From positions 1 through 64,000 of IMG/VR virus record IMGVR_UViG_3300027844_001828: a stretch of 64,000 nt of DNA; one strand, written 5' to 3'. Positions 31,199-55,503 of the stretch are shown here, piece by piece (position 1 is the first letter of the stretch; each line of letters begins with the position of its first letter). A model generated the notes under the pieces. That model saw only the letters and a list, made by a program, of their open reading frames with translations. It did not search any database and was not told the origin of the DNA. The position numbers were made by a program, and so were the translations under genes.

Positions 31199-32752
31199 AT
31201 GATAATAATATACGATAAAAAAAGCAGGGTGATCGTTGAGAGCCTTACCACAAACTCAGAGGGCGAGCTACCCTCTTCAGACTCTTTGTCTAAGATGTAT
31301 CCAAAAAGTTATAAGAGACTTCTTTGCTGTAACATGGAAATCCCGACAAATATAAGTGTTGTTGGAGCGACGATTGAAATAAAATCTGAGATTCCTTTCA
31401 AGATTTTCAAAGACGATTCGATAGTGTTTGAGTTGACTATAAAAGAGTTCGATCAGAAGCTCAAAAACAAGCGAGAAGAAAGAAGAAACAGCATGCTTGT
31501 AAACTTTCCGTGCGTATTCTCCAAGAAAGGAGTGAGCGGATTCACAGATCAACTTTCACGCTTGCCACAAACCTTTGATGAAATTGGGTTGTCGATGCGA
31601 GATGGTAGTTATTTTGAAAAGGGGTTGATGAAGGTTGGTTGGTGGGGAACATTCATGGATGCTGGCGGCTATGCCAACATGAATCGCGAGATAACAAGAA
31701 GGCTACACAACTATAGGATAATCCCCTATGTTAGAACTTACGCGACCGCCTGTCAGATTGACCCACCTGCTGCTGACTTATTCAGGCAATACGAAGATAT
31801 GAAACCTAAAAAGGGCGATCACCCATTTGTATATGCTTACACTCCGATGGCTCACACTTACCATGGCGGTAAGCGTGTCTTTTTTACAATGATGGAGACC
31901 TCATCTTTACACTCTGTGTTTGTAGACCATTGCAATAGGTTTAGTGATGAAGTCTGGGTCCCGTCTGAGGCTAACAAGGAGTTATTCAAATCAGAGGGTG
32001 TAAAAAAGAGAATCAGAGTTGCCCCACTTGGCATTGATGAAATCATATACTTTAAACAAAGTGTTCCGGTTAAGAAAATAAATTCCTACAAGAGTTTGTT
32101 TGGACCAAAGGTGGAAGATGGCGTGAGGGATTTTAAGTTCCTAACACTGATTCAGTGGAACTTTAGGAAAGGCTATGACGCCTTGATAAAAGCCTTCGTT
32201 AATAAGTACACGGCAAAGGATGATGTCTGCTTAGTCTTTGCCACACAATATTCATTTGACACGGTGTACAACGACTTGAAAAGACATTTACCAAGGAATA
32301 GTGATCTTCCACAGGTTGTCCTGTATAATGACATAATCCCGACAGTAGACATGCCGGGGTTCTACAAAAATTTTGATTGTTATATTCATATGTCAAGAGG
32401 TGAAGGTTTTAGCTTGACTCAAATTGAAGCAGCCGCATGTGGGTTGCCAGTAATATCTAATTGTCATTCTGGGATGACTGAGTATCTCACAAAAGAAAAC
32501 AGTTTCATGATCGACTGCAAAGAGGTTGAGAAGTGTTGCCCAGAGCTTGGTAGCGTTTGCTATTTTTACCAAGGTCAGTACTTGTGGAAAGTTGGAAAAA
32601 AACAAATTAACCAGGCTTCAGAATATATGGATTACGTTGTTAATAATTACGGTAATGCGAAGAAGAAAGCGGAAGTGTTCCATGATGACGTAATAAAAAA
32701 TTATACCTGGGAATTAACCGCAGAACGGATAGCATCATTGCTCAAGAGTTAA
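31199..32752 (+). CDS. Glycosyltransferase family 4 (GT-B) with ~140 aa N-terminal extension
   Basis: 'RKGYDALIKAF' and 'SRGEGFSLTQIEAAACGLPVISNCHSGMTEY' are the GT4 signature; 'DEVWVPSEAN...PLGID' also fits. Confidence 0.9.
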   Translation: MIIIYDKKSRVIVESLTTNSEGELPSSDSLSKMYPKSYKRLLCCNMEIPTNISVVGATIEIKSEIPFKIFKDDSIVFELTIKEFDQKLKNKREERRNSMLVNFPCVFSKKGVSGFTDQLSRLPQTFDEIGLSMRDGSYFEKGLMKVGWWGTFMDAGGYANMNREITRRLHNYRIIPYVRTYATACQIDPPAADLFRQYEDMKPKKGDHPFVYAYTPMAHTYHGGKRVFFTMMETSSLHSVFVDHCNRFSDEVWVPSEANKELFKSEGVKKRIRVAPLGIDEIIYFKQSVPVKKINSYKSLFGPKVEDGVRDFKFLTLIQWNFRKGYDALIKAFVNKYTAKDDVCLVFATQYSFDTVYNDLKRHLPRNSDLPQVVLYNDIIPTVDMPGFYKNFDCYIHMSRGEGFSLTQIEAAACGLPVISNCHSGMTEYLTKENSFMIDCKEVEKCCPELGSVCYFYQGQYLWKVGKKQINQASEYMDYVVNNYGNAKKKAEVFHDDVIKNYTWELTAERIASLLKS

Positions 32753-32754
32753 TT

Positions 32755-33396
32755 ATGATTGGACTTGGTTTAATAACTTTGAATGAAGAAGAGTATGTCG
32801 AAAGATGTATCAAGAGCGCCGAGGGGCTCTATGATGAATTAATAGTTCTTGACCACTTCTCTTCAGATAGGACGGCTGAAATATGCGCCGATCTTGGGGC
32901 GCAAGTCGTTCAGGCCAAATGGATTCACGATTTTTCACTCGCCAGGAACCAACTAAATAATTTATTTACCTCTCCATGGATATTTCAGATGGACGCTGAT
33001 GAACATCTTGAGGGGGAAAAGTTAAATTTATTGTCACATGCAGTTGAAATATCAGAAAACCAGGGTATAGTAGCATGGTCCTTGTTAAGGAAGAACCATT
33101 ATCCTGATCATGATGCAGGATCTCCGTTTTTTGCGGCTCCGTTTTACCCGGACCCGCAAGTGAGACTGTTCAAAAACCAACCTGAGATATATTGGAGTGG
33201 AGCAGTTCACGAAGGAGTTTCTCAGGCGATTACAGAAGGGAATATTGGAACAATAGGACGCCTTTCTGTTTGTCTTCACCATCACATGTTCCGAGGAAAC
33301 CAAGAAAAATACGAAGACTTAAAAGGACAATATTACAGTAACATTCAACAAGGAGTTTTCCATGAAGATGGCCACCCGACTAATAAAGTCAACTGA
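32755..33396 (+). CDS. Glycosyltransferase family 2 (GT-A; WaaE/SunS/flagellin-GT-like catalytic domain)
   Basis: 'LITLNEEEYVERCIKS...ELIVLDHFSSDRT', 'DFSLARN', DxD motif 'MDADE', 'VRLFKN...WSGAVHE'. Confidence 0.9.
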   Translation: MIGLGLITLNEEEYVERCIKSAEGLYDELIVLDHFSSDRTAEICADLGAQVVQAKWIHDFSLARNQLNNLFTSPWIFQMDADEHLEGEKLNLLSHAVEISENQGIVAWSLLRKNHYPDHDAGSPFFAAPFYPDPQVRLFKNQPEIYWSGAVHEGVSQAITEGNIGTIGRLSVCLHHHMFRGNQEKYEDLKGQYYSNIQQGVFHEDGHPTNKVN

Positions 33397-44575: not shown

Positions 44576-45133
44576 ATGAGAAATGATTATAATAGTTGGC
44601 ACGAATGCTTTTTTGGATTCGCATATGAGGCGGCGGGACGATCAAAAGATCCGTCTACTCAATGCGGAGCTTGTATTGTTAGAAATAACAGGCCGAAGGG
44701 GATTGGATATAATGGCTTTATAAAAGGAGTCGAAGACACCCCGGAACGATGGGAAAAAGAAGAAAAGAAAAAGTACGTCTACCACGCTGAAAAGAATGCG
44801 ATAGCTAATAGTGAACTTAGAGACTTTGAAGATTGTCATTTGTATTTATGGTCTTCAAACCCGAATGTTTACCTTCCGTGCAAGGCATGCGCTGGAGATA
44901 TCGTACAGTTTGGAATAAGAAACGTACACGTATTGAAAAGACACAACGCAATTGAACCTGAAGATGACAAAAGATGGGACACTGGATTGACCTTATCTCT
45001 ATTTGAACATGGAGACGTAAGAGTTCATTCTCATTCCGCCGAAGAAGTACACCGTGCTTTGCTCACAAGAGCAACGAAAGATCTAAGCATGGAGAACATA
45101 GGTAATGAGTCAGGAACAGATAACAAGTGTTAA
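44576..45133 (+). CDS. dCMP deaminase (ComEB/T4 Cd-like)
   Basis: 'AAGRSKDPSTQCGACIV', 'GIGYNGF', 'HAEKNAI', 'PCKAC'. Confidence 0.92.
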   Translation: MRNDYNSWHECFFGFAYEAAGRSKDPSTQCGACIVRNNRPKGIGYNGFIKGVEDTPERWEKEEKKKYVYHAEKNAIANSELRDFEDCHLYLWSSNPNVYLPCKACAGDIVQFGIRNVHVLKRHNAIEPEDDKRWDTGLTLSLFEHGDVRVHSHSAEEVHRALLTRATKDLSMENIGNESGTDNKC

Positions 45134-46196
45134 TGCGATAGCACCAACGAGAATTTGCGATATTGGCGGGTGGACTGATACCTGGTTCGCAGGACACGGG
45201 TCAATTTTTAATATTGCAGTATATCCGTATGTGGATGTCCAGGTTTCCATATTGAGGGACGAAGAGAGCGCTGGGAAAATTTTTCTTTCTATGGAAAATT
45301 ACGACGATAAGTACCAGTTTGACTCAAGCAAAAAAATTGATGGCCCACTTGGGTCAAAGTTATTTTTACGAGAGGGTAAGGGGGGAGAATTCGGAAAATA
45401 CCCACTCGTAGAGAAGGCTGTTGAGATAATGGATACCCCTATGGATGTAGGGTATAGTATCAGCGTGTATTCTGACGCGCCACCTGGAGCGTCCATCGGA
45501 ACCTCCGCCGCCGTTTCTGTCGCCTTAATCGCGAGCCTTGACAGGCTATCTGACGGCCATTTAACCGCTCATGAAATAGCTCAGATGGCGCATTCAATAG
45601 AAACCAAGTACTTAAATTTGGAATGTGGCGTTCAGGATCAGTTGGCAAGTGCCTATGGTGGTATTAATTTCATTGATGTAAATAGATACCCATACTCAGT
45701 CGTCTCACCAGTTCCTATTAGCGATCAGATTTGGTGGGAATTAGAACAGAGACTGGCATTAGTTTATATTGGAATTCCACATGAATCGAGTGCGATCCAT
45801 AAGATTGTTATTGAAAGCCTTGGGAAAACCCCCTCACTTGACAATCGAATAGAGAAATTAAGGGTTCTTGCGAGAAGAGCTAAAAACGCTTTGATCGATG
45901 GTAATTTCGTCGAATTTGGCGATATTATGAATGAAAGCACAGCTGTTCAAAAAAGTATGCATCCAGAATTGGTGTGCTCTCAGTTTAGAGAGATCATCGA
46001 TATAGTTAAACATTATAAAGCCCTTGGATGTAAAGTAAATGGGGCTGGCGGGGATGGCGGGTCTTTAAGTATCTTGTTTGGAGAATGTAGAGAGGATAAA
46101 AGGAAGTGCCTGAAAGTTCTTGAAGAAAAGGGGTTTAACATTCTCCCCATATATCTCGCAAGAAGGGGGCTTAGGGTTTGGGAATCAAGAGGGTAG
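45105..46196 (+). CDS. hddA: GHMP sugar kinase, D-glycero-alpha-D-manno-heptose-7-phosphate kinase (HddA)-like
   Basis: 'APTRICDIGGWTD', 'PPGASIGTSAA', 'GVQDQLASAYGGINFI' and 'GCKVNGAGGDGG' match the HddA/fucokinase subgroup of GHMP kinases. Confidence 0.75.
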   Translation: MSQEQITSVNAIAPTRICDIGGWTDTWFAGHGSIFNIAVYPYVDVQVSILRDEESAGKIFLSMENYDDKYQFDSSKKIDGPLGSKLFLREGKGGEFGKYPLVEKAVEIMDTPMDVGYSISVYSDAPPGASIGTSAAVSVALIASLDRLSDGHLTAHEIAQMAHSIETKYLNLECGVQDQLASAYGGINFIDVNRYPYSVVSPVPISDQIWWELEQRLALVYIGIPHESSAIHKIVIESLGKTPSLDNRIEKLRVLARRAKNALIDGNFVEFGDIMNESTAVQKSMHPELVCSQFREIIDIVKHYKALGCKVNGAGGDGGSLSILFGECREDKRKCLKVLEEKGFNILPIYLARRGLRVWESRG

Positions 46197-46199
46197 GAC

Positions 46200-47090
46200 A
46201 TGAAATACATTCCGTCTGATGAGAATTTGGTAAAGTTTACAGACTTTGTCAATGAGGGGGGTTTCTATTTGAGAAACACGAGAGTTTGGAAAGGTAGATC
46301 TTCTTGTGTTATAAAACTCCCTGGTGTAGATGCCGATATAGAATTTAAGCCTCAAAGAGACTTCACTATTCATGATAGACTCATGATGACTCATATGAGA
46401 ATACATCGTTGGATGTATAGAACATTCACGGTCAAAACAGAATATGGATATTTCGTCCCCAATTGCAACCTTGATGAGTTTTCTTTGGTTAACGAAAGGT
46501 TCACAGAAAGATTCTACAATATTGTTGAGGAATCATCCACTATAAGACTTGATGAAATAAAAGCAAGCGTTGAAGGATCGTTTCATGAGATGATTAGATG
46601 GATATGGGCGAACAATCTTGGAAATGATGGAGACCCACCAGAGTCATTTGTAAATGAATATATCAAAAAACGAATAAAAAGCATAGAAACTCCAGAGTCG
46701 TTCAAAAACCAGTTTGAGTATTCGGTAACAAAAGTAAACCCGGAAAAATCCCCGGAGATTAGTGAAAAAGTAGCGAGAGAGGTGTATTCCAGGTGTATAA
46801 ACAAGAGGATGGCTTTCTATTTGTACTTGAGCAAGTCAAAAGAAAAGATCAGGGCCACAGGGAATGGGCCTTTAAAAAATCTTGTGAGATACACCCTACA
46901 TTGGAAAAAGGTACCATTCTATGGTGATGACGAGCTATTATTTTTTATAGATGAGATAAGACATTTGGTCATGAGAAACTTGGAAAGAGATCATGAAGAA
47001 ATATGCGCCAAGATAGATGTTTTAATGAACTATATAAAGACGTGTACAAAATACCCAATATACCTTGGAGACAAAAAGTATGGAGAATAG
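46200..47090 (+). CDS. Hypothetical protein (296 aa), weak resemblance to DUF3150-type phage proteins
   Basis: Intact ORF with SD. 'RIHRWMYRTFTVKTEYGYFVPNCNLDEF' recalls the DUF3150 pattern, but the match is tentative. Confidence 0.5.
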   Translation: MKYIPSDENLVKFTDFVNEGGFYLRNTRVWKGRSSCVIKLPGVDADIEFKPQRDFTIHDRLMMTHMRIHRWMYRTFTVKTEYGYFVPNCNLDEFSLVNERFTERFYNIVEESSTIRLDEIKASVEGSFHEMIRWIWANNLGNDGDPPESFVNEYIKKRIKSIETPESFKNQFEYSVTKVNPEKSPEISEKVAREVYSRCINKRMAFYLYLSKSKEKIRATGNGPLKNLVRYTLHWKKVPFYGDDELLFFIDEIRHLVMRNLERDHEEICAKIDVLMNYIKTCTKYPIYLGDKKYGE

Positions 47091-47343
47091 ATTCGAAGGA
47101 ATAGAAGTGATAGATGATGGCCCGGATGTTTATTCCAGGAGTAAGGACGGTAGAATCATGTTTAGATTTAATAGAATAGACGGGACGTTTGCCCTGTTCA
47201 GATCTACAAGAATCAGCGATGCAGAAAAAGAGTTCACGTTGATAATGTTTGATAAGTTGAGCAATGATATGACCGAGACGAGTAGAGAAGATGTAAAATG
47301 TGCATTAGAGTATAAACTTGAAAAGGACCTATTTTGCACATGA
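47080..47343 (+). CDS. Hypothetical protein
   Basis: GGAG SD upstream of ATG 47080; its stop overlaps the next ATG (ATGA). Confidence 0.55.
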   Translation: MENRFEGIEVIDDGPDVYSRSKDGRIMFRFNRIDGTFALFRSTRISDAEKEFTLIMFDKLSNDMTETSREDVKCALEYKLEKDLFCT

Positions 47344-49535
47344 GTAATGCAGAGCATAAAAACATATTACCATTTAGCATTTTCAAAACCATCCTCATTG
47401 TAGAGAAGAGGGCTCTTGATGAAGGGATATCATTAGTGGACTCTTGTTTTTTCGCAAGCTGTATGATGAGTGCGAACAAGATGCATTTCCACCCCACCTT
47501 TGACGATAAAGAGATGGGCAAGTTCTGCGCCTTCATAGATGAAAACTGTCTTGTTAGATCGAAAAAGAAGACTTTTAATATAGATGACATCAAGTTCGCG
47601 AAACCAGTAATCGACTGTGTTGTGAAAGCGAAGGTCGAACCCAACAATGTTGATGCATGTCACGTCTTTTATCTTTTGATGAAATCAGATAGGAAGTTGA
47701 ATTCAATCGCTGCGCAACACAATATAACCACGAATAAGATTCTTGAGGTTGTAAATAGGATTGGCTCAAGTAAAATTGAGAATGATAAAAAGGTTACGGG
47801 TAAAAACAAGAAGCCCGCCAAGAGTGTCGCAAGTGGAAAAGAAGATTTGATTTTCAAATACTGCATAGATTTTAATGAGAAAGCAGCCAAGGGCGAATTG
47901 TCACCAGTGTTTTGTAGGGATGATGAAATTGAGAAGGTGATCGTCTCCTTGATGAAAAAGAACAAAGCTAATCCATTGTTGATTGGTGAGCCGGGAGTCG
48001 GTAAGACAGCCATTGTTGAGGGTATAGCGCAAAAGTTCGCTGCCGGGGATGTGCCTAAGAGATTCAAAGGGTATAAGATTCTTGGATTAAGTATGTCATC
48101 GATCATTCAAGGGACAACCTTGAGAGGGCAGTTTGAAGAACGCCTCGAAGCCATAATGAAAAAGATAATCGAAACTGGCAATATCATTTTGTTCATTGAT
48201 GAGATCCACACAATGGTGGGTGCGGGAAACGACTCTAATGGATTGGATGCGGGAAATATTATGAAGCCGTATCTTGCCAGAGGTGAATTTAGATGCATCG
48301 GAGCGACAACGTTTGACGATTATTATAAGTACATGAAAAAAGACAAGGCTCTTTCGAGAAGGTTCCAGAGAATTTTTGTTTCAGAACCCAGTAAAGAAGA
48401 GACGATTGAAATAATTAGGGGGTTAGCACCAGGTCTTGAGACCTATCACGGTTGCGTCATTGACTCATCGTCTTTTGAAAAATCTGTTGATTTATGCCAA
48501 AGATTTATCAATGACAGGTTTTTTCCAGACAAGGCTATAGATTGTCTTGATCACGCTTGTGCAAAGTCATCATTAGACTTGAGTGTTGTCGGAGACGATA
48601 TTATTGAGGAAGTTATTAGCGACTTCTGTGACATCCCCGTCTCTTTAATCAGAACGAAAGAGTCTGTGAGGCTTGAGAAGCTTGAGGGCGCTATTGGGAG
48701 TGAGATATTTGGAAATGAAAATAGTATCAAAGAATTTTGCAATAGAATAAGATTCGCTTGCTCAACGAGGAAGTCTTCGAGTGGGCCGTTATGTTCTTTT
48801 GTGTTTTATGGCCCTCCGGGGATTGGTAAAAAATCTATTATCGGGATAACAGCGAGGCATCTGTATGGTGATCAATCCGTAATAGTAATAAATGGATCGG
48901 AATACTCAGAGAGCAATGCGATAAATAGAATAATTGGCTCTCCGCCTGGATATATCGGTTACGATGAGGAAGGGTATATTTTAAGAGAGGTGAGACGCAA
49001 GCCCCATACGATGATTTTAATTAAGAAGCAAGATCTAATGCATGCTACAGTGAAAGAGCAGTTTAAGCAGATAATAGAGCGTGGTGTGGTAACTGATGTT
49101 CATGGGATGATAGCGGACTTCTCAAATTGCGTTATCGCCTTCTCGGTGGACACCAGCAACAAAAGTAGTTTGGGATTTACTCAGGGAGGGAACAGCGTCA
49201 GTGGCGATGCGGAATGCGAGACAATAAAAAAGAATTGCCCATTATTATCCCGCGTGTCTCACCACATATCTTTCAACGACACACCATCCGAGTACGTGTC
49301 GAGTCTCGTATCAGTCGAAATGGAAAAATTCCATGACGAGTTGAAATTCAGCGAAATCCGTGTACATTATGATTCTAAGTGTATCAAGTATTTCGAATCC
49401 TTGAAGGGCTCTCCTTCATCTATTCGATCCGAAGTAAGAAACAAGCTCGAATACGAATTATGTAATGGGCTATCCTCAGACAATCGAGAGTACTGGTTTG
49501 AAGTAGTCGATGATGAAATAACAGTTAGGAGGTAA
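47340..49535 (+). CDS. clpA: ClpA/ClpC-family AAA+ chaperone; NBD1 intact, NBD2 degenerate
   Basis: NBD1 has 'GEPGVGKT', 'FIDEIH', 'CIGATT' and 'ALSRRFQ'. NBD2 has 'GPPGIGKK', pore loop 'GSPPGYIGY', Walker B replaced by 'LIKKQD', and an 'LGF' loop. There is no middle coiled-coil domain. Confidence 0.85.
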   Translation: MSNAEHKNILPFSIFKTILIVEKRALDEGISLVDSCFFASCMMSANKMHFHPTFDDKEMGKFCAFIDENCLVRSKKKTFNIDDIKFAKPVIDCVVKAKVEPNNVDACHVFYLLMKSDRKLNSIAAQHNITTNKILEVVNRIGSSKIENDKKVTGKNKKPAKSVASGKEDLIFKYCIDFNEKAAKGELSPVFCRDDEIEKVIVSLMKKNKANPLLIGEPGVGKTAIVEGIAQKFAAGDVPKRFKGYKILGLSMSSIIQGTTLRGQFEERLEAIMKKIIETGNIILFIDEIHTMVGAGNDSNGLDAGNIMKPYLARGEFRCIGATTFDDYYKYMKKDKALSRRFQRIFVSEPSKEETIEIIRGLAPGLETYHGCVIDSSSFEKSVDLCQRFINDRFFPDKAIDCLDHACAKSSLDLSVVGDDIIEEVISDFCDIPVSLIRTKESVRLEKLEGAIGSEIFGNENSIKEFCNRIRFACSTRKSSSGPLCSFVFYGPPGIGKKSIIGITARHLYGDQSVIVINGSEYSESNAINRIIGSPPGYIGYDEEGYILREVRRKPHTMILIKKQDLMHATVKEQFKQIIERGVVTDVHGMIADFSNCVIAFSVDTSNKSSLGFTQGGNSVSGDAECETIKKNCPLLSRVSHHISFNDTPSEYVSSLVSVEMEKFHDELKFSEIRVHYDSKCIKYFESLKGSPSSIRSEVRNKLEYELCNGLSSDNREYWFEVVDDEITVRR

Positions 49536-49537
49536 TC

Positions 49538-50029
49538 TTGAACGCTAACAAGTTCACGCTCGGTAAGATCATCTTGGATTGTGACACAACAGTTCACGCT
49601 TTGTTAAGGGATGACCAGAGGGGTGTATTCACGCCGATGTATTTGGATTACGAATGCTCAAGGTCCCTTGTTGAATTAAATGAAAATAATTACGCCCGCG
49701 AAATGAAAATGACTGTAGACTTTTTGATCCAGTCATGGCGGAGTATGGGTTTTTCAATCGAGAGTCTTTTTCTTGACAATCCAAACGGGGGAGCAGACGA
49801 CGTTCCAGTTCCAGTTATCGTATTGGCCCAGAATAATGGTGATCAGGTGATGATGAAGATTTCCTCGTTTGCACCCATCAATGTCGCTTTAACAATTGTT
49901 CAGTTAACTGGAATAAATATTTATATTACTGATAGAATAGAGAAAAATCTTCATATTTTAGATATTTCAGTGTATGATAAGTATATACAAGAAACATCTT
50001 TGACAGATGAAATAGAAGAGGAAGACTAA
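49538..50029 (+). CDS. DUF151 / bifunctional-nuclease-like protein (diverged)
   Basis: AGGAGG SD with TTG start. 'PMYLDYECSRSL...MTVDFL...MGFSIESLFL...APINVALTIVQLTGINIYI' follows the DUF151 layout. Confidence 0.55.
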   Translation: MNANKFTLGKIILDCDTTVHALLRDDQRGVFTPMYLDYECSRSLVELNENNYAREMKMTVDFLIQSWRSMGFSIESLFLDNPNGGADDVPVPVIVLAQNNGDQVMMKISSFAPINVALTIVQLTGINIYITDRIEKNLHILDISVYDKYIQETSLTDEIEEED

Positions 50030-54700: not shown

Positions 54701-54759
54701 GGTAATTTTTTATGATAATTTCTGGGTTTTCAGGTATCGGTGTGATTATAAGAGGAGGG

Positions 54760-55503
54760 ATGTCTCAATCGCCATTTAGATTTCTTAGCGCCGACATAAA
54801 TCTAAGTCAAAACATTAATATCTATCTACCATCATACGGTGGGGAAAATCTTAGAAGAATAATTTCTCCAAATATTGGAACAATATCGGGGAGGGTGTCT
54901 TTGATACCAACCGCCTCTTCAAGCGCAATGTTTTATAATATCGTCAAGGACTTCGAGCCGGTAGATGTCAAGCTGTATTATTATTCTGGCCGAAATAGAT
55001 CCTTCACCACTTGTTTCTTAGACAACCTGACGTTTTCTTGTAAGGCCGGTGAAATGGTCAATTTAAGTTTTGATGTGGTTTGTGAGGGTGAGGACTTTGA
55101 GTCCAATTCAAAAAGATACACTGTCGCTGAAAAACTTGTAACCTGGGACAAGACTGGAATTACTGGGTTCCCATTGAGCGCCACTGAGGATCTGAATAGT
55201 TTTACCTACTCTGTAAAGAACAACCTGGTTCTCATTAGAACAGCGGAAGGTCTGCTTCCAAGAAAGTACGGTAAAGGAATACAGGAGGTCAGTGGTAATT
55301 TGACTTATTTCTCATCTATAGATTCTTTGAGAGAGCCGTCTCGACTGAATAAATATAAGATTCAAGTTTCCAATGCAGTAACCTTTTATGTTGACGACTT
55401 CTCTGTTACCCATAAGATCGCGAACCATTGGACATACAAGACACCATTGAGTCCTGGGATCGTCATCACGACCCTTGACTGGACCCGCGTTGACGACATA
55501 TAA
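54760..55503 (+). CDS. Tail-tube-like protein, isolated from the structural module
   Basis: Two similar halves ('ISGRVSL...FTTCFLDNLTFSCKAGEMVNLSFDV' and 'LNSFTYSVKNNL...IQEVSGNLTY') resemble phage tube-fold proteins. GGAGG SD before ATG 54760. Confidence 0.5.
   Translation: MSQSPFRFLSADINLSQNINIYLPSYGGENLRRIISPNIGTISGRVSLIPTASSSAMFYNIVKDFEPVDVKLYYYSGRNRSFTTCFLDNLTFSCKAGEMVNLSFDVVCEGEDFESNSKRYTVAEKLVTWDKTGITGFPLSATEDLNSFTYSVKNNLVLIRTAEGLLPRKYGKGIQEVSGNLTYFSSIDSLREPSRLNKYKIQVSNAVTFYVDDFSVTHKIANHWTYKTPLSPGIVITTLDWTRVDDI

What the first reader, a model, noticed from the sequence alone, without database searches (positions are those of the whole stretch)
47340..49535. Phage ClpA with a catalytically dead second ring but intact pore loop and ClpP-docking loop
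Seen: NBD1 is canonical. In NBD2, Walker A reads GPPGIGKK (T>K, ~48809-48835) and Walker B reads 'LIKKQD' instead of 'LFDEIE' (~49011-49035). The GYIG pore loop (~48950) and an LGF motif (49170-49178) are retained, and there is no M-domain. Known: in ClpA, D2 hydrolysis provides most unfolding power, D1 drives assembly, and IGF/LGF loops dock ClpP. Inference: a decoy unfoldase that occupies or reprogrammes host ClpP, or poisons host ClpA/C hexamers. This could stabilise phage proteins or block proteolysis-dependent defences such as antitoxin turnover.
Basis: partly seen in the sequence, partly recalled or inferred. Interest (0 to 1): 0.68.

Follow-up and report, generated by a model that had tools for sequence, protein, structure and literature searches.

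The report
Phage ClpA-like unfoldase, dead second ring
A lineage of giant aquatic phages keeps a ClpA-type protein-unfolding machine whose second ATPase ring, normally the main motor, has lost its catalytic residues. That ring is still under strong selection, together with its substrate-gripping loop and a loop that looks like a protease-docking loop, so it is a natural one-motor version of a two-motor enzyme.

Summary
ORF 47340-49535 (+) encodes a 731-aa two-ring Clp/Hsp100 ATPase without an M-domain. D1 is canonical. D2 reads GPPGIGKK in Walker A and ILIKKQD at the Walker B position, and it keeps GYIG and LGF.

It is not an error or drift:
- The identical protein is on at least 24 contigs.
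- 27 relatives (33-54% identity, contigs up to 470 kb) form one clade (support 100). All lack the Walker B Asp-Glu pair.
- 25/27 lack the Arg finger and all lack the sensor-2 Arg. 25/27 have Asp at the sensor-1 position and 24/27 have Lys after the P-loop Lys.
- The P-loop, GYxG and [LIMV]GF stay conserved, and dN/dS of D2 is about 0.04.
- The gene holds a fixed slot in the replication module. In a sister phage lineage the same slot holds a ClpA-like gene with intact or independently degraded D2, followed by DnaJ.

Best reading: a D1-powered hexamer whose D2 is a static conduit and ClpP-docking ring, probably working with host ClpP. No ClpP was found in 133 of 235 kb. ClpP binding is untested, and the decoy idea is neither shown nor excluded. 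I rate it a new variant of a known kind, of moderate interest.

The parts
47340..49535 (+). ClpA-like two-ring AAA+ gene (731 aa, P0001)
   Evidence: AAA + AAA_lid_9 + AAA_2. TIGR02639 ClpA scores 481 bits, below its cutoff of 993. phrog_4871. AF2 pLDDT 91.9, with ClpC/ClpA/ClpB protomers as top Foldseek hits.
47361..47789 (+). Divergent Clp_N-type N-domain (aa 8-150)
   Evidence: No Pfam Clp_N hit. Profile-profile hhalign of clade N-domains against ClpB/ClpA N-domains gives probability 97.3%, E 2.5e-11 over 130 columns.
47847..48584 (+). D1 AAA+ module, fully canonical (Walker A 47985-48008, Walker B 48186-48203, sensor-1 48300-48311, Arg fingers 48354-48368). Its pore loop is TLR instead of KYR (48111-48128).
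   Evidence: G216, G219, G221, K222, D287, E288, T324, R340 and R341 are invariant across 144 sequences. xLRG is found in all 27 clade members.
48780..49532 (+). D2 AAA+ module without catalytic residues
   Evidence: Walker B DE is absent in 27/27. The Arg finger is absent in 25/27. The sensor-2 Arg is absent in 27/27. Sensor-1 Asn is Asp in 25/27. Mean pairwise identity of D2-large is 0.42, against 0.56 in active relatives. dN/dS is about 0.04.
48810..48836 (+). D2 P-loop GPPGIGKKS, with Lys in place of the Mg-binding Thr/Ser
   Evidence: In the clade: G491 27/27, G494 26, G496 27, K497 26, K498 24. Lys after the P-loop Lys occurs only in clade members among the 263 aligned proteins whose D2 motifs were printed (the 37 with degraded Walker B and the 89 M-less proteins).
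48948..48959 (+). D2 pore-1 loop GYIG
   Evidence: G537 26, Y538 26 and G540 26 of 27 in the clade.
49011..49034 (+). Former D2 Walker B, MILIKKQD (Asp-Glu replaced by Lys-Lys)
   Evidence: The two positions vary across the clade (QN, KN, TN, TG, DG and others) and are never DE.
49170..49178 (+). LGF tripeptide in a flexible loop after the sensor-1 strand, at the position of the ClpA IGL / ClpC VGF ClpP-docking loop
   Evidence: It aligns to the IGL of the ClpA loop in the BAP chimera 5ofo. [LIMV]GF is present in 25/27 clade members. The loop lies between strand 598-604 and helix 623-632, in the 10-residue pLDDT blocks that score 82 and 64.
47080..47343 (+). Conserved 87-aa partner gene whose stop overlaps the ClpA-like start (ATGA)
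   Evidence: A family of 27 proteins of 79-92 aa; the longest contig listed matches that of a clade protein for 9 of them. It sits directly upstream in L001, L003, L004, L005 and L010, and a weak homologue sits upstream of sister P0026. It is absent from L011/L012. The ATGA overlap is shown.
49538..50029 (+). Downstream 163-aa gene of unknown function, syntenic in relatives. An AGGAGG Shine-Dalgarno lies inside the last codons of the ClpA-like gene.
   Evidence: Identity among orthologues is only 15-26%.
46200..47090 (+). Upstream 296-aa gene of unknown function, syntenic in all relatives examined

Best explanation
This is a core, functional gene of a lineage of huge aquatic phages. It is predicted to form a ClpA-type hexamer in which only the D1 ring hydrolyses ATP.

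The D2 ring has become a non-catalytic pseudo-ATPase ring. It probably still holds a nucleotide or phosphate in its conserved P-loop as a structural ligand. It keeps two working surfaces: the GYxG pore loops that line the substrate channel, and the [LIMV]GF loops that dock onto ClpP.

The machine would therefore be a low-force, D1-driven translocase and gate-opener. It would feed loosely folded or adaptor-delivered substrates into ClpP. That is most likely the host's ClpP, because no phage clpP was found. Substrate choice would be set by a divergent Clp_N domain and perhaps by the co-transcribed 87-aa protein.

Shown: the anatomy, its conservation, purifying selection and synteny. Inferred: hexamer formation, D1-only hydrolysis, nucleotide binding by D2, ClpP docking and the identity of the substrates.
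For: - D1 catalytic residues are invariant over 144 sequences.
- The D2 Walker B, Arg finger, sensor-1 and sensor-2 are lost across one clade of 27 with SH-aLRT 100.
- The D2 P-loop, GYxG and xGF are conserved at 24-27 of 27.
- dN/dS between L011 and L012 is 0.04 for D2-large and 0.04 for D1.
- The identical protein is on at least 24 contigs in 31 index blocks.
- The gene has a fixed position in the replication module of phages of 150-470 kb.
- LGF aligns to the ClpA IGL loop.
- The AF2 protomer superposes on substrate-engaged ClpA 6w24_A (TM-score normalised to target length 0.86).
- An intein sits in the D1 P-loop of clade member P0008. From general knowledge, inteins favour essential active sites, so this mildly marks that site as important.
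- The Walker B Glu of D2 needs at least 5 changes of state on the tree of relatives, all within the dead clade and its sister group, so D2 hydrolysis is repeatedly dispensable here.
- Literature: D1 KYR loops of ClpA can translocate on their own and D1 has independent motor activity (PMC8666677).
Against: [quoted passage not shown] A D1-only machine would be weak.
- The D1 pore-loop Tyr, which matters for ClpA degradation (Y259A, PMC8666677), is Leu in the whole clade.
- ClpP binding is untested. The complex prediction gave no verdict.
- No ClpP gene was found near the gene or in 133 kb of the genome. The host is unknown, so no partner is identified.
- The position in a replication module hints at a remodelling role that need not involve ClpP.
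Confidence: 0.45

Rival explanations
1. It is a ClpP-independent remodelling chaperone. The hexamer would use D1 hydrolysis to disassemble or activate phage replication, transcription or assembly complexes, in the way ClpA activates P1 RepA or ClpX releases MuA. On this reading the xGF loop is inherited baggage or contacts another partner.
For: - The gene is locked between the DnaB/primase genes and the FEN/topoisomerase/clamp-loader/sigma/clamp genes in every relative examined.
- In the sister lineage the orthologous gene is followed by DnaJ, which makes a chaperone module.
- No ClpP gene was found.
- Iyer et al. propose translocase or assembly roles for jumbo-phage ClpA/ClpX (PMC7824862).
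Against: - [LIMV]GF is retained in 25/27 members over deep divergence, while the neighbouring loop residues vary.
- In the few ClpB proteins inspected at this position the loop is absent.
- Gene order in huge phages is weak evidence of function.
Confidence: 0.25
2. This is the reader's idea: a decoy or inhibitor. The hexamer would cap host ClpP through its xGF loops, or co-assemble with host ClpA/ClpC, and so block or slow host proteolysis. That would protect phage proteins or stop proteolysis-dependent defences.
For: - It has docking-type loops and a ring that cannot hydrolyse ATP.
Against: - A plug does not need an invariant D1 Walker B Glu and Arg fingers, nor a conserved D2 pore-loop Tyr.
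- Identity to cellular Clp ATPases is only about 30-35%, which makes specific co-assembly with host subunits unlikely.
- The sister lineage holds the same slot with an intact D2, so the ancestral role was an active enzyme.
Confidence: 0.15
3. It works with a phage-encoded ClpP-like peptidase located in the unsampled 44% of the genome, forming a self-contained phage protease.
For: - Some jumbo phages do encode ClpP (PMC7824862).
- Only 133,039 of 235,624 bp were screened.
Against: - phmmer with E. coli ClpP found nothing at E<=10 in the window, in bases 64-133 kb, or in the flanks of eight related loci.
- ClpP does not occur anywhere in the text of the moraphage paper, including its table of 26 VOGs found in over 80% of genomes. 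That lineage may be related (PMC12619734).
Confidence: 0.1
4. It is a decaying gene or an assembly artefact with no function.
For: D2 is less conserved than in active relatives (0.42 against 0.56 pairwise identity).
Against: - The identical protein is on at least 24 contigs.
- The reading frame is intact in 27 diverged relatives.
- dN/dS is about 0.04-0.09 in every domain.
- The AF2 model is confident across D2.
Confidence: 0.02

Closest known systems
E. coli ClpA (TIGR02639; PDB 1ksf, 6w24, 7uiv)
   Same: - Same domain order: Clp_N, then D1 (classic clade), then D2 (HCLR clade), with no M-domain.
- GYxG pore loop in D2.
- A hydrophobic-Gly-hydrophobic loop after the sensor-1 strand, at the IGL position.
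- The protomer fold superposes (TM-score normalised to target length 0.86).
   Different: - D2 lacks the Walker B DE, sensor-1 Asn and sensor-2 Arg. The clade also lacks the Arg finger, though this phage has an Arg in that column.
- Walker A reads GKK.
- The D1 pore loop is TLR, not KYR.
- The N-domain and D2-small domain are too diverged for Pfam.
- It scores 481 bits against the equivalog cutoff of 993.
Engineered D2-inactive ClpA (E565Q) used by the Sauer/Baker laboratories (PMC7568338)
   Same: Only D1 can hydrolyse ATP, while the pore loops and ClpP loops are intact.
   Different: - The mutant keeps Mg-ATP binding, the Arg finger and the sensors.
- The phage protein has lost the whole catalytic set and has been shaped by selection in that state.
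ClpA-like proteins of cultured jumbo phages (RaK2/Muenster CPT_Muenster_308; phrog_4871)
   Same: Phage-encoded, M-less, two-ring Clp ATPases, about 33% identical to this one.
   Different: They have a canonical D2 (GKT, DE, TTN, NRID, GARP) and a KYR D1 loop.
Sister phage lineage: ClpA-like + DnaJ module (P0026, P0125 and relatives)
   Same: - Same slot after the helicase, DnaB, primase and dCMP deaminase genes, with a small upstream gene.
- xGF loop present.
- Sensor-2 Arg already lost.
   Different: - D2 Walker A/B, sensor-1 and Arg finger are intact in P0026, or degraded separately in several branches (P0125/P0251, P0128/P0217, P0186).
- The D1 loop has Tyr or Phe.
- Clp_N and D2-small are recognised by Pfam.
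- DnaJ lies downstream.
Two-ring AAA+ proteins with one non-hydrolysing structural ring (NSF D2, PEX1/PEX6 D1); from general knowledge, not tested here
   Same: One ring does the work while the other binds nucleotide, or nothing, and serves as scaffold.
   Different: These are different families. In Clp/Hsp100 the ring sacrificed here is the one that normally does most of the work and contacts the peptidase.

Membership tests
Clp/Hsp100 class-1 (two-AAA+) ATPases | Tandem classic-clade and HCLR-clade AAA+ modules with AAA_lid_9 | tested here: met
   PF00004, PF17871 and PF07724 all score above their cutoffs. Foldseek E 1e-40 to 1e-52 to ClpC/ClpB/ClpA.
ClpA (TIGR02639 equivalog) | Whole-protein score at or above the curated cutoff | tested here: not met
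   480.9 bits against a cutoff of 993.15. ClpB and ClpV models score about as well.
ClpA | Clp_N double-repeat N-domain | tested here: met
   Met only by profile-profile comparison (hhalign 97.3%, E 2.5e-11). There is no Pfam PF02861 hit.
ClpA | No M-domain between D1 and D2 | tested here: met
   The linker is 97 residues, like other M-less relatives. HMMER aligns it to ClpA as a single stretch but to ClpB/Hsp104 as two.
ClpA | Catalytically competent D2 (Walker B Asp-Glu, sensor-1 Asn, Arg finger, sensor-2 Arg) | tested here: not met
   In this protein the positions read KK, D, (R) and S. Across the clade DE is absent in 27/27.
ClpP-partnered unfoldases (ClpA/ClpC/ClpE/ClpX) | [ILMV]-G-[FL] tripeptide on a flexible loop of the ClpP-facing ring | tested here: met
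   LGF at aa 611-613 aligns with the ClpA IGL loop in 5ofo. It is conserved in 25/27 and lies in a lower-confidence loop.
ClpP-partnered unfoldases | Physical binding to and activation of ClpP | tested here: inconclusive
   Complex prediction of D2 with two copies of E. coli ClpP gave no verdict. This needs biochemistry.
ClpB/Hsp104 disaggregases | Coiled-coil M-domain, and no ClpP loop | tested here: not met
   There is no M-domain and the xGF loop is present.
ClpS adaptors (considered for the 87-aa upstream gene) | ClpS alpha/beta fold (PF02617) | tested here: not met
   No Pfam or PHROG hit. The AF2 model (pLDDT 88.6) has no PDB match (Foldseek E > 0.2, VIA best Z 4.6), and no ClpS appears in the lists.

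The most novel reading that the evidence does not exclude
The dead D2 ring is not just a scaffold but a new kind of regulatory pseudo-ATPase. Its P-loop, with a conserved extra Lys (GKK) and an Asp at the sensor-1 position, would bind ATP or another phosphate ligand without Mg2+ and without turnover, locking the ClpP-docking ring in a permanent 'on' conformation.

Together with the co-transcribed 87-aa orphan protein, this would turn host ClpP into a phage-controlled protease driven by a single classic-clade motor. That would be a previously undescribed viral way of taking over the Clp system. It would also be a natural test of whether hand-over-hand translocation can be driven through a ring that never hydrolyses ATP.
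Probability: 0.2. Interest if true: 0.75.

Novelty: new variant of a known kind. Interest (0 to 1): 0.55.

Why it matters
In ClpA the D2 ring is described as the principal motor and D1 as an auxiliary (PMC7568338). Here evolution has kept the opposite arrangement over deep divergence: D1 alive, D2 dead but with its pore loop and protease-docking loop preserved. The Walker B Glu of D2 has changed state at least five times in this phage gene family.

If the protein still translocates substrates, it gives the AAA+ field a natural system for two questions. One is how much a non-hydrolysing ring can contribute to grip and to ClpP coupling. The other is what the minimal motor for a ClpP partner is.

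For phage biology it points to a conserved, unstudied interaction between huge aquatic phages and host proteostasis. These phages may infect Bacteroidota, if the lineage is related to the moraphages of PMC12619734. The 87-aa orphan partner would be a candidate adaptor.

Tried and rejected
- **Complex prediction.** Complex prediction of D2 (aa 440-731) with two copies of E. coli ClpP gave no verdict (score 0.27, mark 0.34). It counts neither for nor against binding.
- **ClpS-like adaptor.** The idea that the 87-aa upstream protein resembles ClpS is not supported: no Pfam or PHROG hit and no PDB fold match.
- **Downstream 163-aa protein.** By eye it resembled a DUF151/bifunctional-nuclease domain. 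Pfam scans of four orthologues at E<=5 gave nothing, so I dropped the idea.
- **Search for ClpP.**
  - Pfam on most ORFs of 90 aa or more in the window found none.
  - phmmer with E. coli ClpP on all six-frame ORFs of 50 aa or more found none. This covered the window, eight related loci and a walk along IMGVR_UViG_3300027844_001828 to base 133,039.
- **Genome scan.** A genome-contig scan with P0001 found no relative in bacterial or archaeal genomes, so it gave no host link or prophage copy.
- **GenBank phages.** The collection holds no member of the clade. The best hits are below 43% identity and have a canonical D2.
- **Pocket geometry.** Model coordinates are not exposed, so the K498-D604 distance in the D2 pocket could not be measured.
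- **Moraphage membership.** I could not verify that this phage is a 'moraphage' (PMC12619734). The contig names of three related loci (L003, L009, L011) are not in the paper's text.
- **dN/dS caveat.** dS between the closest available pair is saturated (1.2-2.3). The dN/dS values are rough, though clearly far below 1.
Full report
**Observation**

The window is the first 64 kb of a 235,624-bp viral contig, IMGVR_UViG_3300027844_001828. The gene sits at 47340 in contig coordinates. All genes lie on the + strand.

ORF 47340-49535 encodes a 731-aa protein (P0001). It matches AAA, AAA_lid_9 and AAA_2 in Pfam. It scores 481 bits on the ClpA equivalog TIGR02639, below the cutoff of 993, and it matches phrog_4871, 'ATP-dependent protease'.
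- D1 GEPGVGKT and ILFIDE
- D2 GPPGIGKKS at 48810-48836
- GYIG at 48948-48959
- MILIKKQD at 49011-49034
- LGF at 49170-49178

HMMER alignments to solved Hsp104 and ClpB place KK under the Walker B Asp-Glu. They place the LGF stretch under the ClpA IGL loop that was grafted into the BAP chimera 5ofo. The D1-to-D2 linker is 97 residues, so there is no M-domain.

The D2 sensor-1 Asn is Asp. The sensor-2 GAR motif is SPS. The D1 pore loop is TLR rather than KYR. This phage has an Arg in the D2 Arg-finger column, but its relatives do not.

**Not an error, not drift**

The identical protein is called on at least 24 contigs, in 31 blocks of the assembly index, from independent samples. Word-indexed and exhaustive searches recover a set of relatives at 33-54% identity, on contigs up to 470 kb.

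In a maximum-likelihood tree of 71 M-less relatives and ClpB outgroups, the 27 proteins with a degraded D2 form one clade with SH-aLRT 100. This clade is sister, with support 99, to a group of 14.

Within the clade:
- The Walker B pair is never Asp-Glu. The two positions vary freely.
- The Arg finger is absent in 25/27 and the sensor-2 Arg in 27/27.
- Sensor-1 is Asp in 25/27.
- The residue after the P-loop Lys is Lys in 24/27. No protein outside the clade has Lys there among those whose D2 motifs were printed.

Other D2 positions are held at 24-27 of 27:
- the P-loop glycines and Lys
- GSPPGYxG
- the Gly-Phe of the loop
- a PSEIRR-like stretch in the D2 small domain

The D2 large domain is less conserved than in active relatives (mean pairwise identity 0.42 against 0.56). 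D1 is at least as conserved (0.60 against 0.56).

Between the two closest members with DNA in hand (L011, L012), dN/dS is about 0.04 for both D1 and D2-large. dS is saturated, so the ratio is rough but far below 1.

**Structure**

AlphaFold2 with a 144-sequence alignment gives mean pLDDT 91.9. Foldseek returns ClpC, ClpB and ClpA protomers. Substrate-engaged ClpA 6w24_A superposes at TM-score 0.86 normalised to the target length, rmsd 3.6 Å.

The xGF tripeptide lies in a loop between strand 598-604 and helix 623-632, in the 10-residue confidence blocks that drop to 82 and 64. That is what I would expect of a flexible docking loop.

The N-terminal 150 residues have no Pfam hit. A profile-profile comparison shows they are a diverged Clp_N domain (97.3%, E 2.5e-11).

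**Genomic context**

The gene lies in a replication and nucleotide-metabolism block, in this order:
- UvsW-like helicase
- two unknown genes
- DnaB
- primase zinc ribbon
- dCMP deaminase
- GHMP kinase
- an unknown 296-aa gene
- an unknown 87-aa gene
- the ClpA-like gene
- five small unknown genes
- FEN
- topoisomerase IA
- a tube-like protein
- clamp loader
- sigma factor
- beta clamp
- RuvC

The same order holds around clade members that are only 37-50% identical, on contigs of 149, 332 and 470 kb, and around two closer ones.

The 87-aa gene overlaps the ClpA-like start in an ATGA. It belongs to a family of 27 small proteins; the longest contig listed matches that of a clade protein for 9 of them. 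It is also upstream of the most divergent member, P0121, and a weak homologue precedes the sister-group gene. It is missing from L011 and L012. Its model is confident (pLDDT 88.6) but has no match among solved structures, and it is not ClpS-like.

**Sister lineage**

Two members of the sister group (P0026, P0125) occupy the same slot after the helicase, DnaB, primase and deaminase genes in other large phage contigs. There the ClpA-like gene is followed by an overlapping DnaJ gene.

The sister group has already lost the sensor-2 Arg. Some members keep a complete Walker A/B, sensor-1 and Arg finger. Three branches have lost the Walker B Glu (P0125/P0251, P0128/P0217, P0186), and P0140 and P0230 have Asp in its place. 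On the tree the Glu needs at least five changes of state.

ClpA-like proteins of cultured jumbo phages (RaK2/Muenster) and of a 735-kb metagenomic phage have a canonical D2.

So D2 catalysis has been given up repeatedly in this particular phage gene family. It was given up once completely, and long ago, in the clade that contains the window.

**Is there a ClpP?**

None was found by any of these searches:
- Pfam on most ORFs of 90 aa or more in the window
- phmmer with E. coli ClpP on all six-frame ORFs of the window and of eight related loci
- a walk along the viral contig to base 133,039, which is 56% of the genome

A phage clpP in the remaining 102 kb is not excluded.

**Mechanism**

The evidence shows a selected, intact two-ring protein in which D1 has every residue needed for hydrolysis and D2 has none. 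Yet D2 keeps its phosphate-binding loop, its pore-loop tyrosine and a ClpP-type docking tripeptide.

From established ClpA work (PMC7568338, PMC8666677):
- D2 supplies about 83% of the ATPase and most of the unfolding power.
- A D2-inactive variant fails on many substrates.
- D1 has independent translocation activity.

I therefore consider the following most likely (0.45). The protein is a D1-driven, low-force translocase and ClpP activator. Its D2 ring serves as a static conduit and docking adaptor. It works with host ClpP on substrates chosen by the diverged N-domain and possibly by the 87-aa protein.

The conserved Lys after the P-loop Lys, the loss of the acidic Walker B pair and the Asp at sensor-1 suggest Mg-free, non-exchanging ligand binding. 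I could not test this.

Points against this reading:
- The Leu in the D1 pore loop.
- The expected weakness of a D1-only motor.
- The absence of any direct evidence of ClpP binding. The single complex prediction gave no verdict and is not evidence either way.

The rivals are:
- A ClpP-independent remodelling chaperone tied to replication or assembly (0.25). This is favoured by the synteny and the DnaJ neighbour in the sister lineage.
It is disfavoured because a plug needs neither D1 hydrolysis residues nor a D2 pore loop, and because the ancestral state at this locus was an active enzyme.
- Partnership with an unseen phage ClpP (0.10).
- A decaying gene, which is excluded.

**Comparison and novelty**

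The protein works most like ClpA and shares its architecture. It fails the ClpA equivalog score and the defining competent D2, so I do not file it as ClpA.

Jumbo-phage ClpA, ClpX, ClpS and ClpP genes have been catalogued (PMC7824862). A ClpA family is listed among the near-core genes of the aquatic 'moraphages' predicted to infect Bacteroidota (PMC12619734). That lineage may be related, since the DnaJ-linked sister group fits its description, but I could not verify this.

My full-text searches found no description of a naturally D2-dead Clp/Hsp100 unfoldase in phages. I rate it a new variant of a known kind, interest about 0.55. It is a clean natural counterpart to engineered ring-inactivation experiments, but its function rests on inference until ClpP binding and D1-only activity are measured.

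Noticed in passing
window 1066-31184: Six consecutive giant ORFs (1306, 942, 1396, 1183, 2334 and 2759 aa) fill 30 kb and have no Pfam match at E<=1e-4. They may be virion or injected proteins of this huge phage.
   Followed up: partly
window 47080-47343: An 87-aa orphan protein is translationally coupled (ATGA) to the ClpA-like gene. Its family has 27 members, with invariant R25, F28, R29, F40, R41, S42, R44, E49 and a penultimate Cys. The confident four-strand, two-helix model has no match among solved structures.
   Followed up: yes
protein P0008 (clade member, 1094 aa): An intein with a LAGLIDADG homing-endonuclease domain is inserted inside the D1 P-loop, between GEPGVGK and TAIVEG.
   Followed up: partly
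L004:12288-13953: In the 332-kb relative, a resolvase gene and an IS605 OrfB/TnpB (Cas12f1-like) gene are inserted directly after the ClpA-like gene. They split it from its usual downstream neighbours.
   Followed up: no
L008:12277-13305 and L009:12340-13380: In the sister phage lineage the orthologous ClpA-like gene is followed by an overlapping full-length DnaJ gene. A Dam-type methyltransferase sits after the helicase.
   Followed up: partly
window 45105-46196; L004:7783-8823; L005:7780-8805: The slot between the dCMP deaminase/primase genes and the ~300-aa gene is variable. It holds a GHMP kinase here, an NAD-dependent sugar epimerase/dehydratase in two relatives, and nothing in L003. With the glycosyltransferases at 31199-33396, this hints at sugar-nucleotide or DNA-modification chemistry.
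   Followed up: no
window 54712-55503: A tail-tube-like gene (PF18906; phrog_290 minor tail) sits between topoisomerase IA and the clamp loader, inside the replication block. It is conserved there in relatives.
   Followed up: no
JGI sample 3300010883 copy of the locus: In one otherwise identical contig the topoisomerase IA gene is called as two ORFs (233 + 280 aa). This is a frameshift or an assembly error.
   Followed up: no
window 49520-49540: A perfect AGGAGG Shine-Dalgarno lies within the last codons of the ClpA-like gene, 5 nt before the TTG start of the downstream 163-aa gene. This indicates operon-style coupling.
   Followed up: partly
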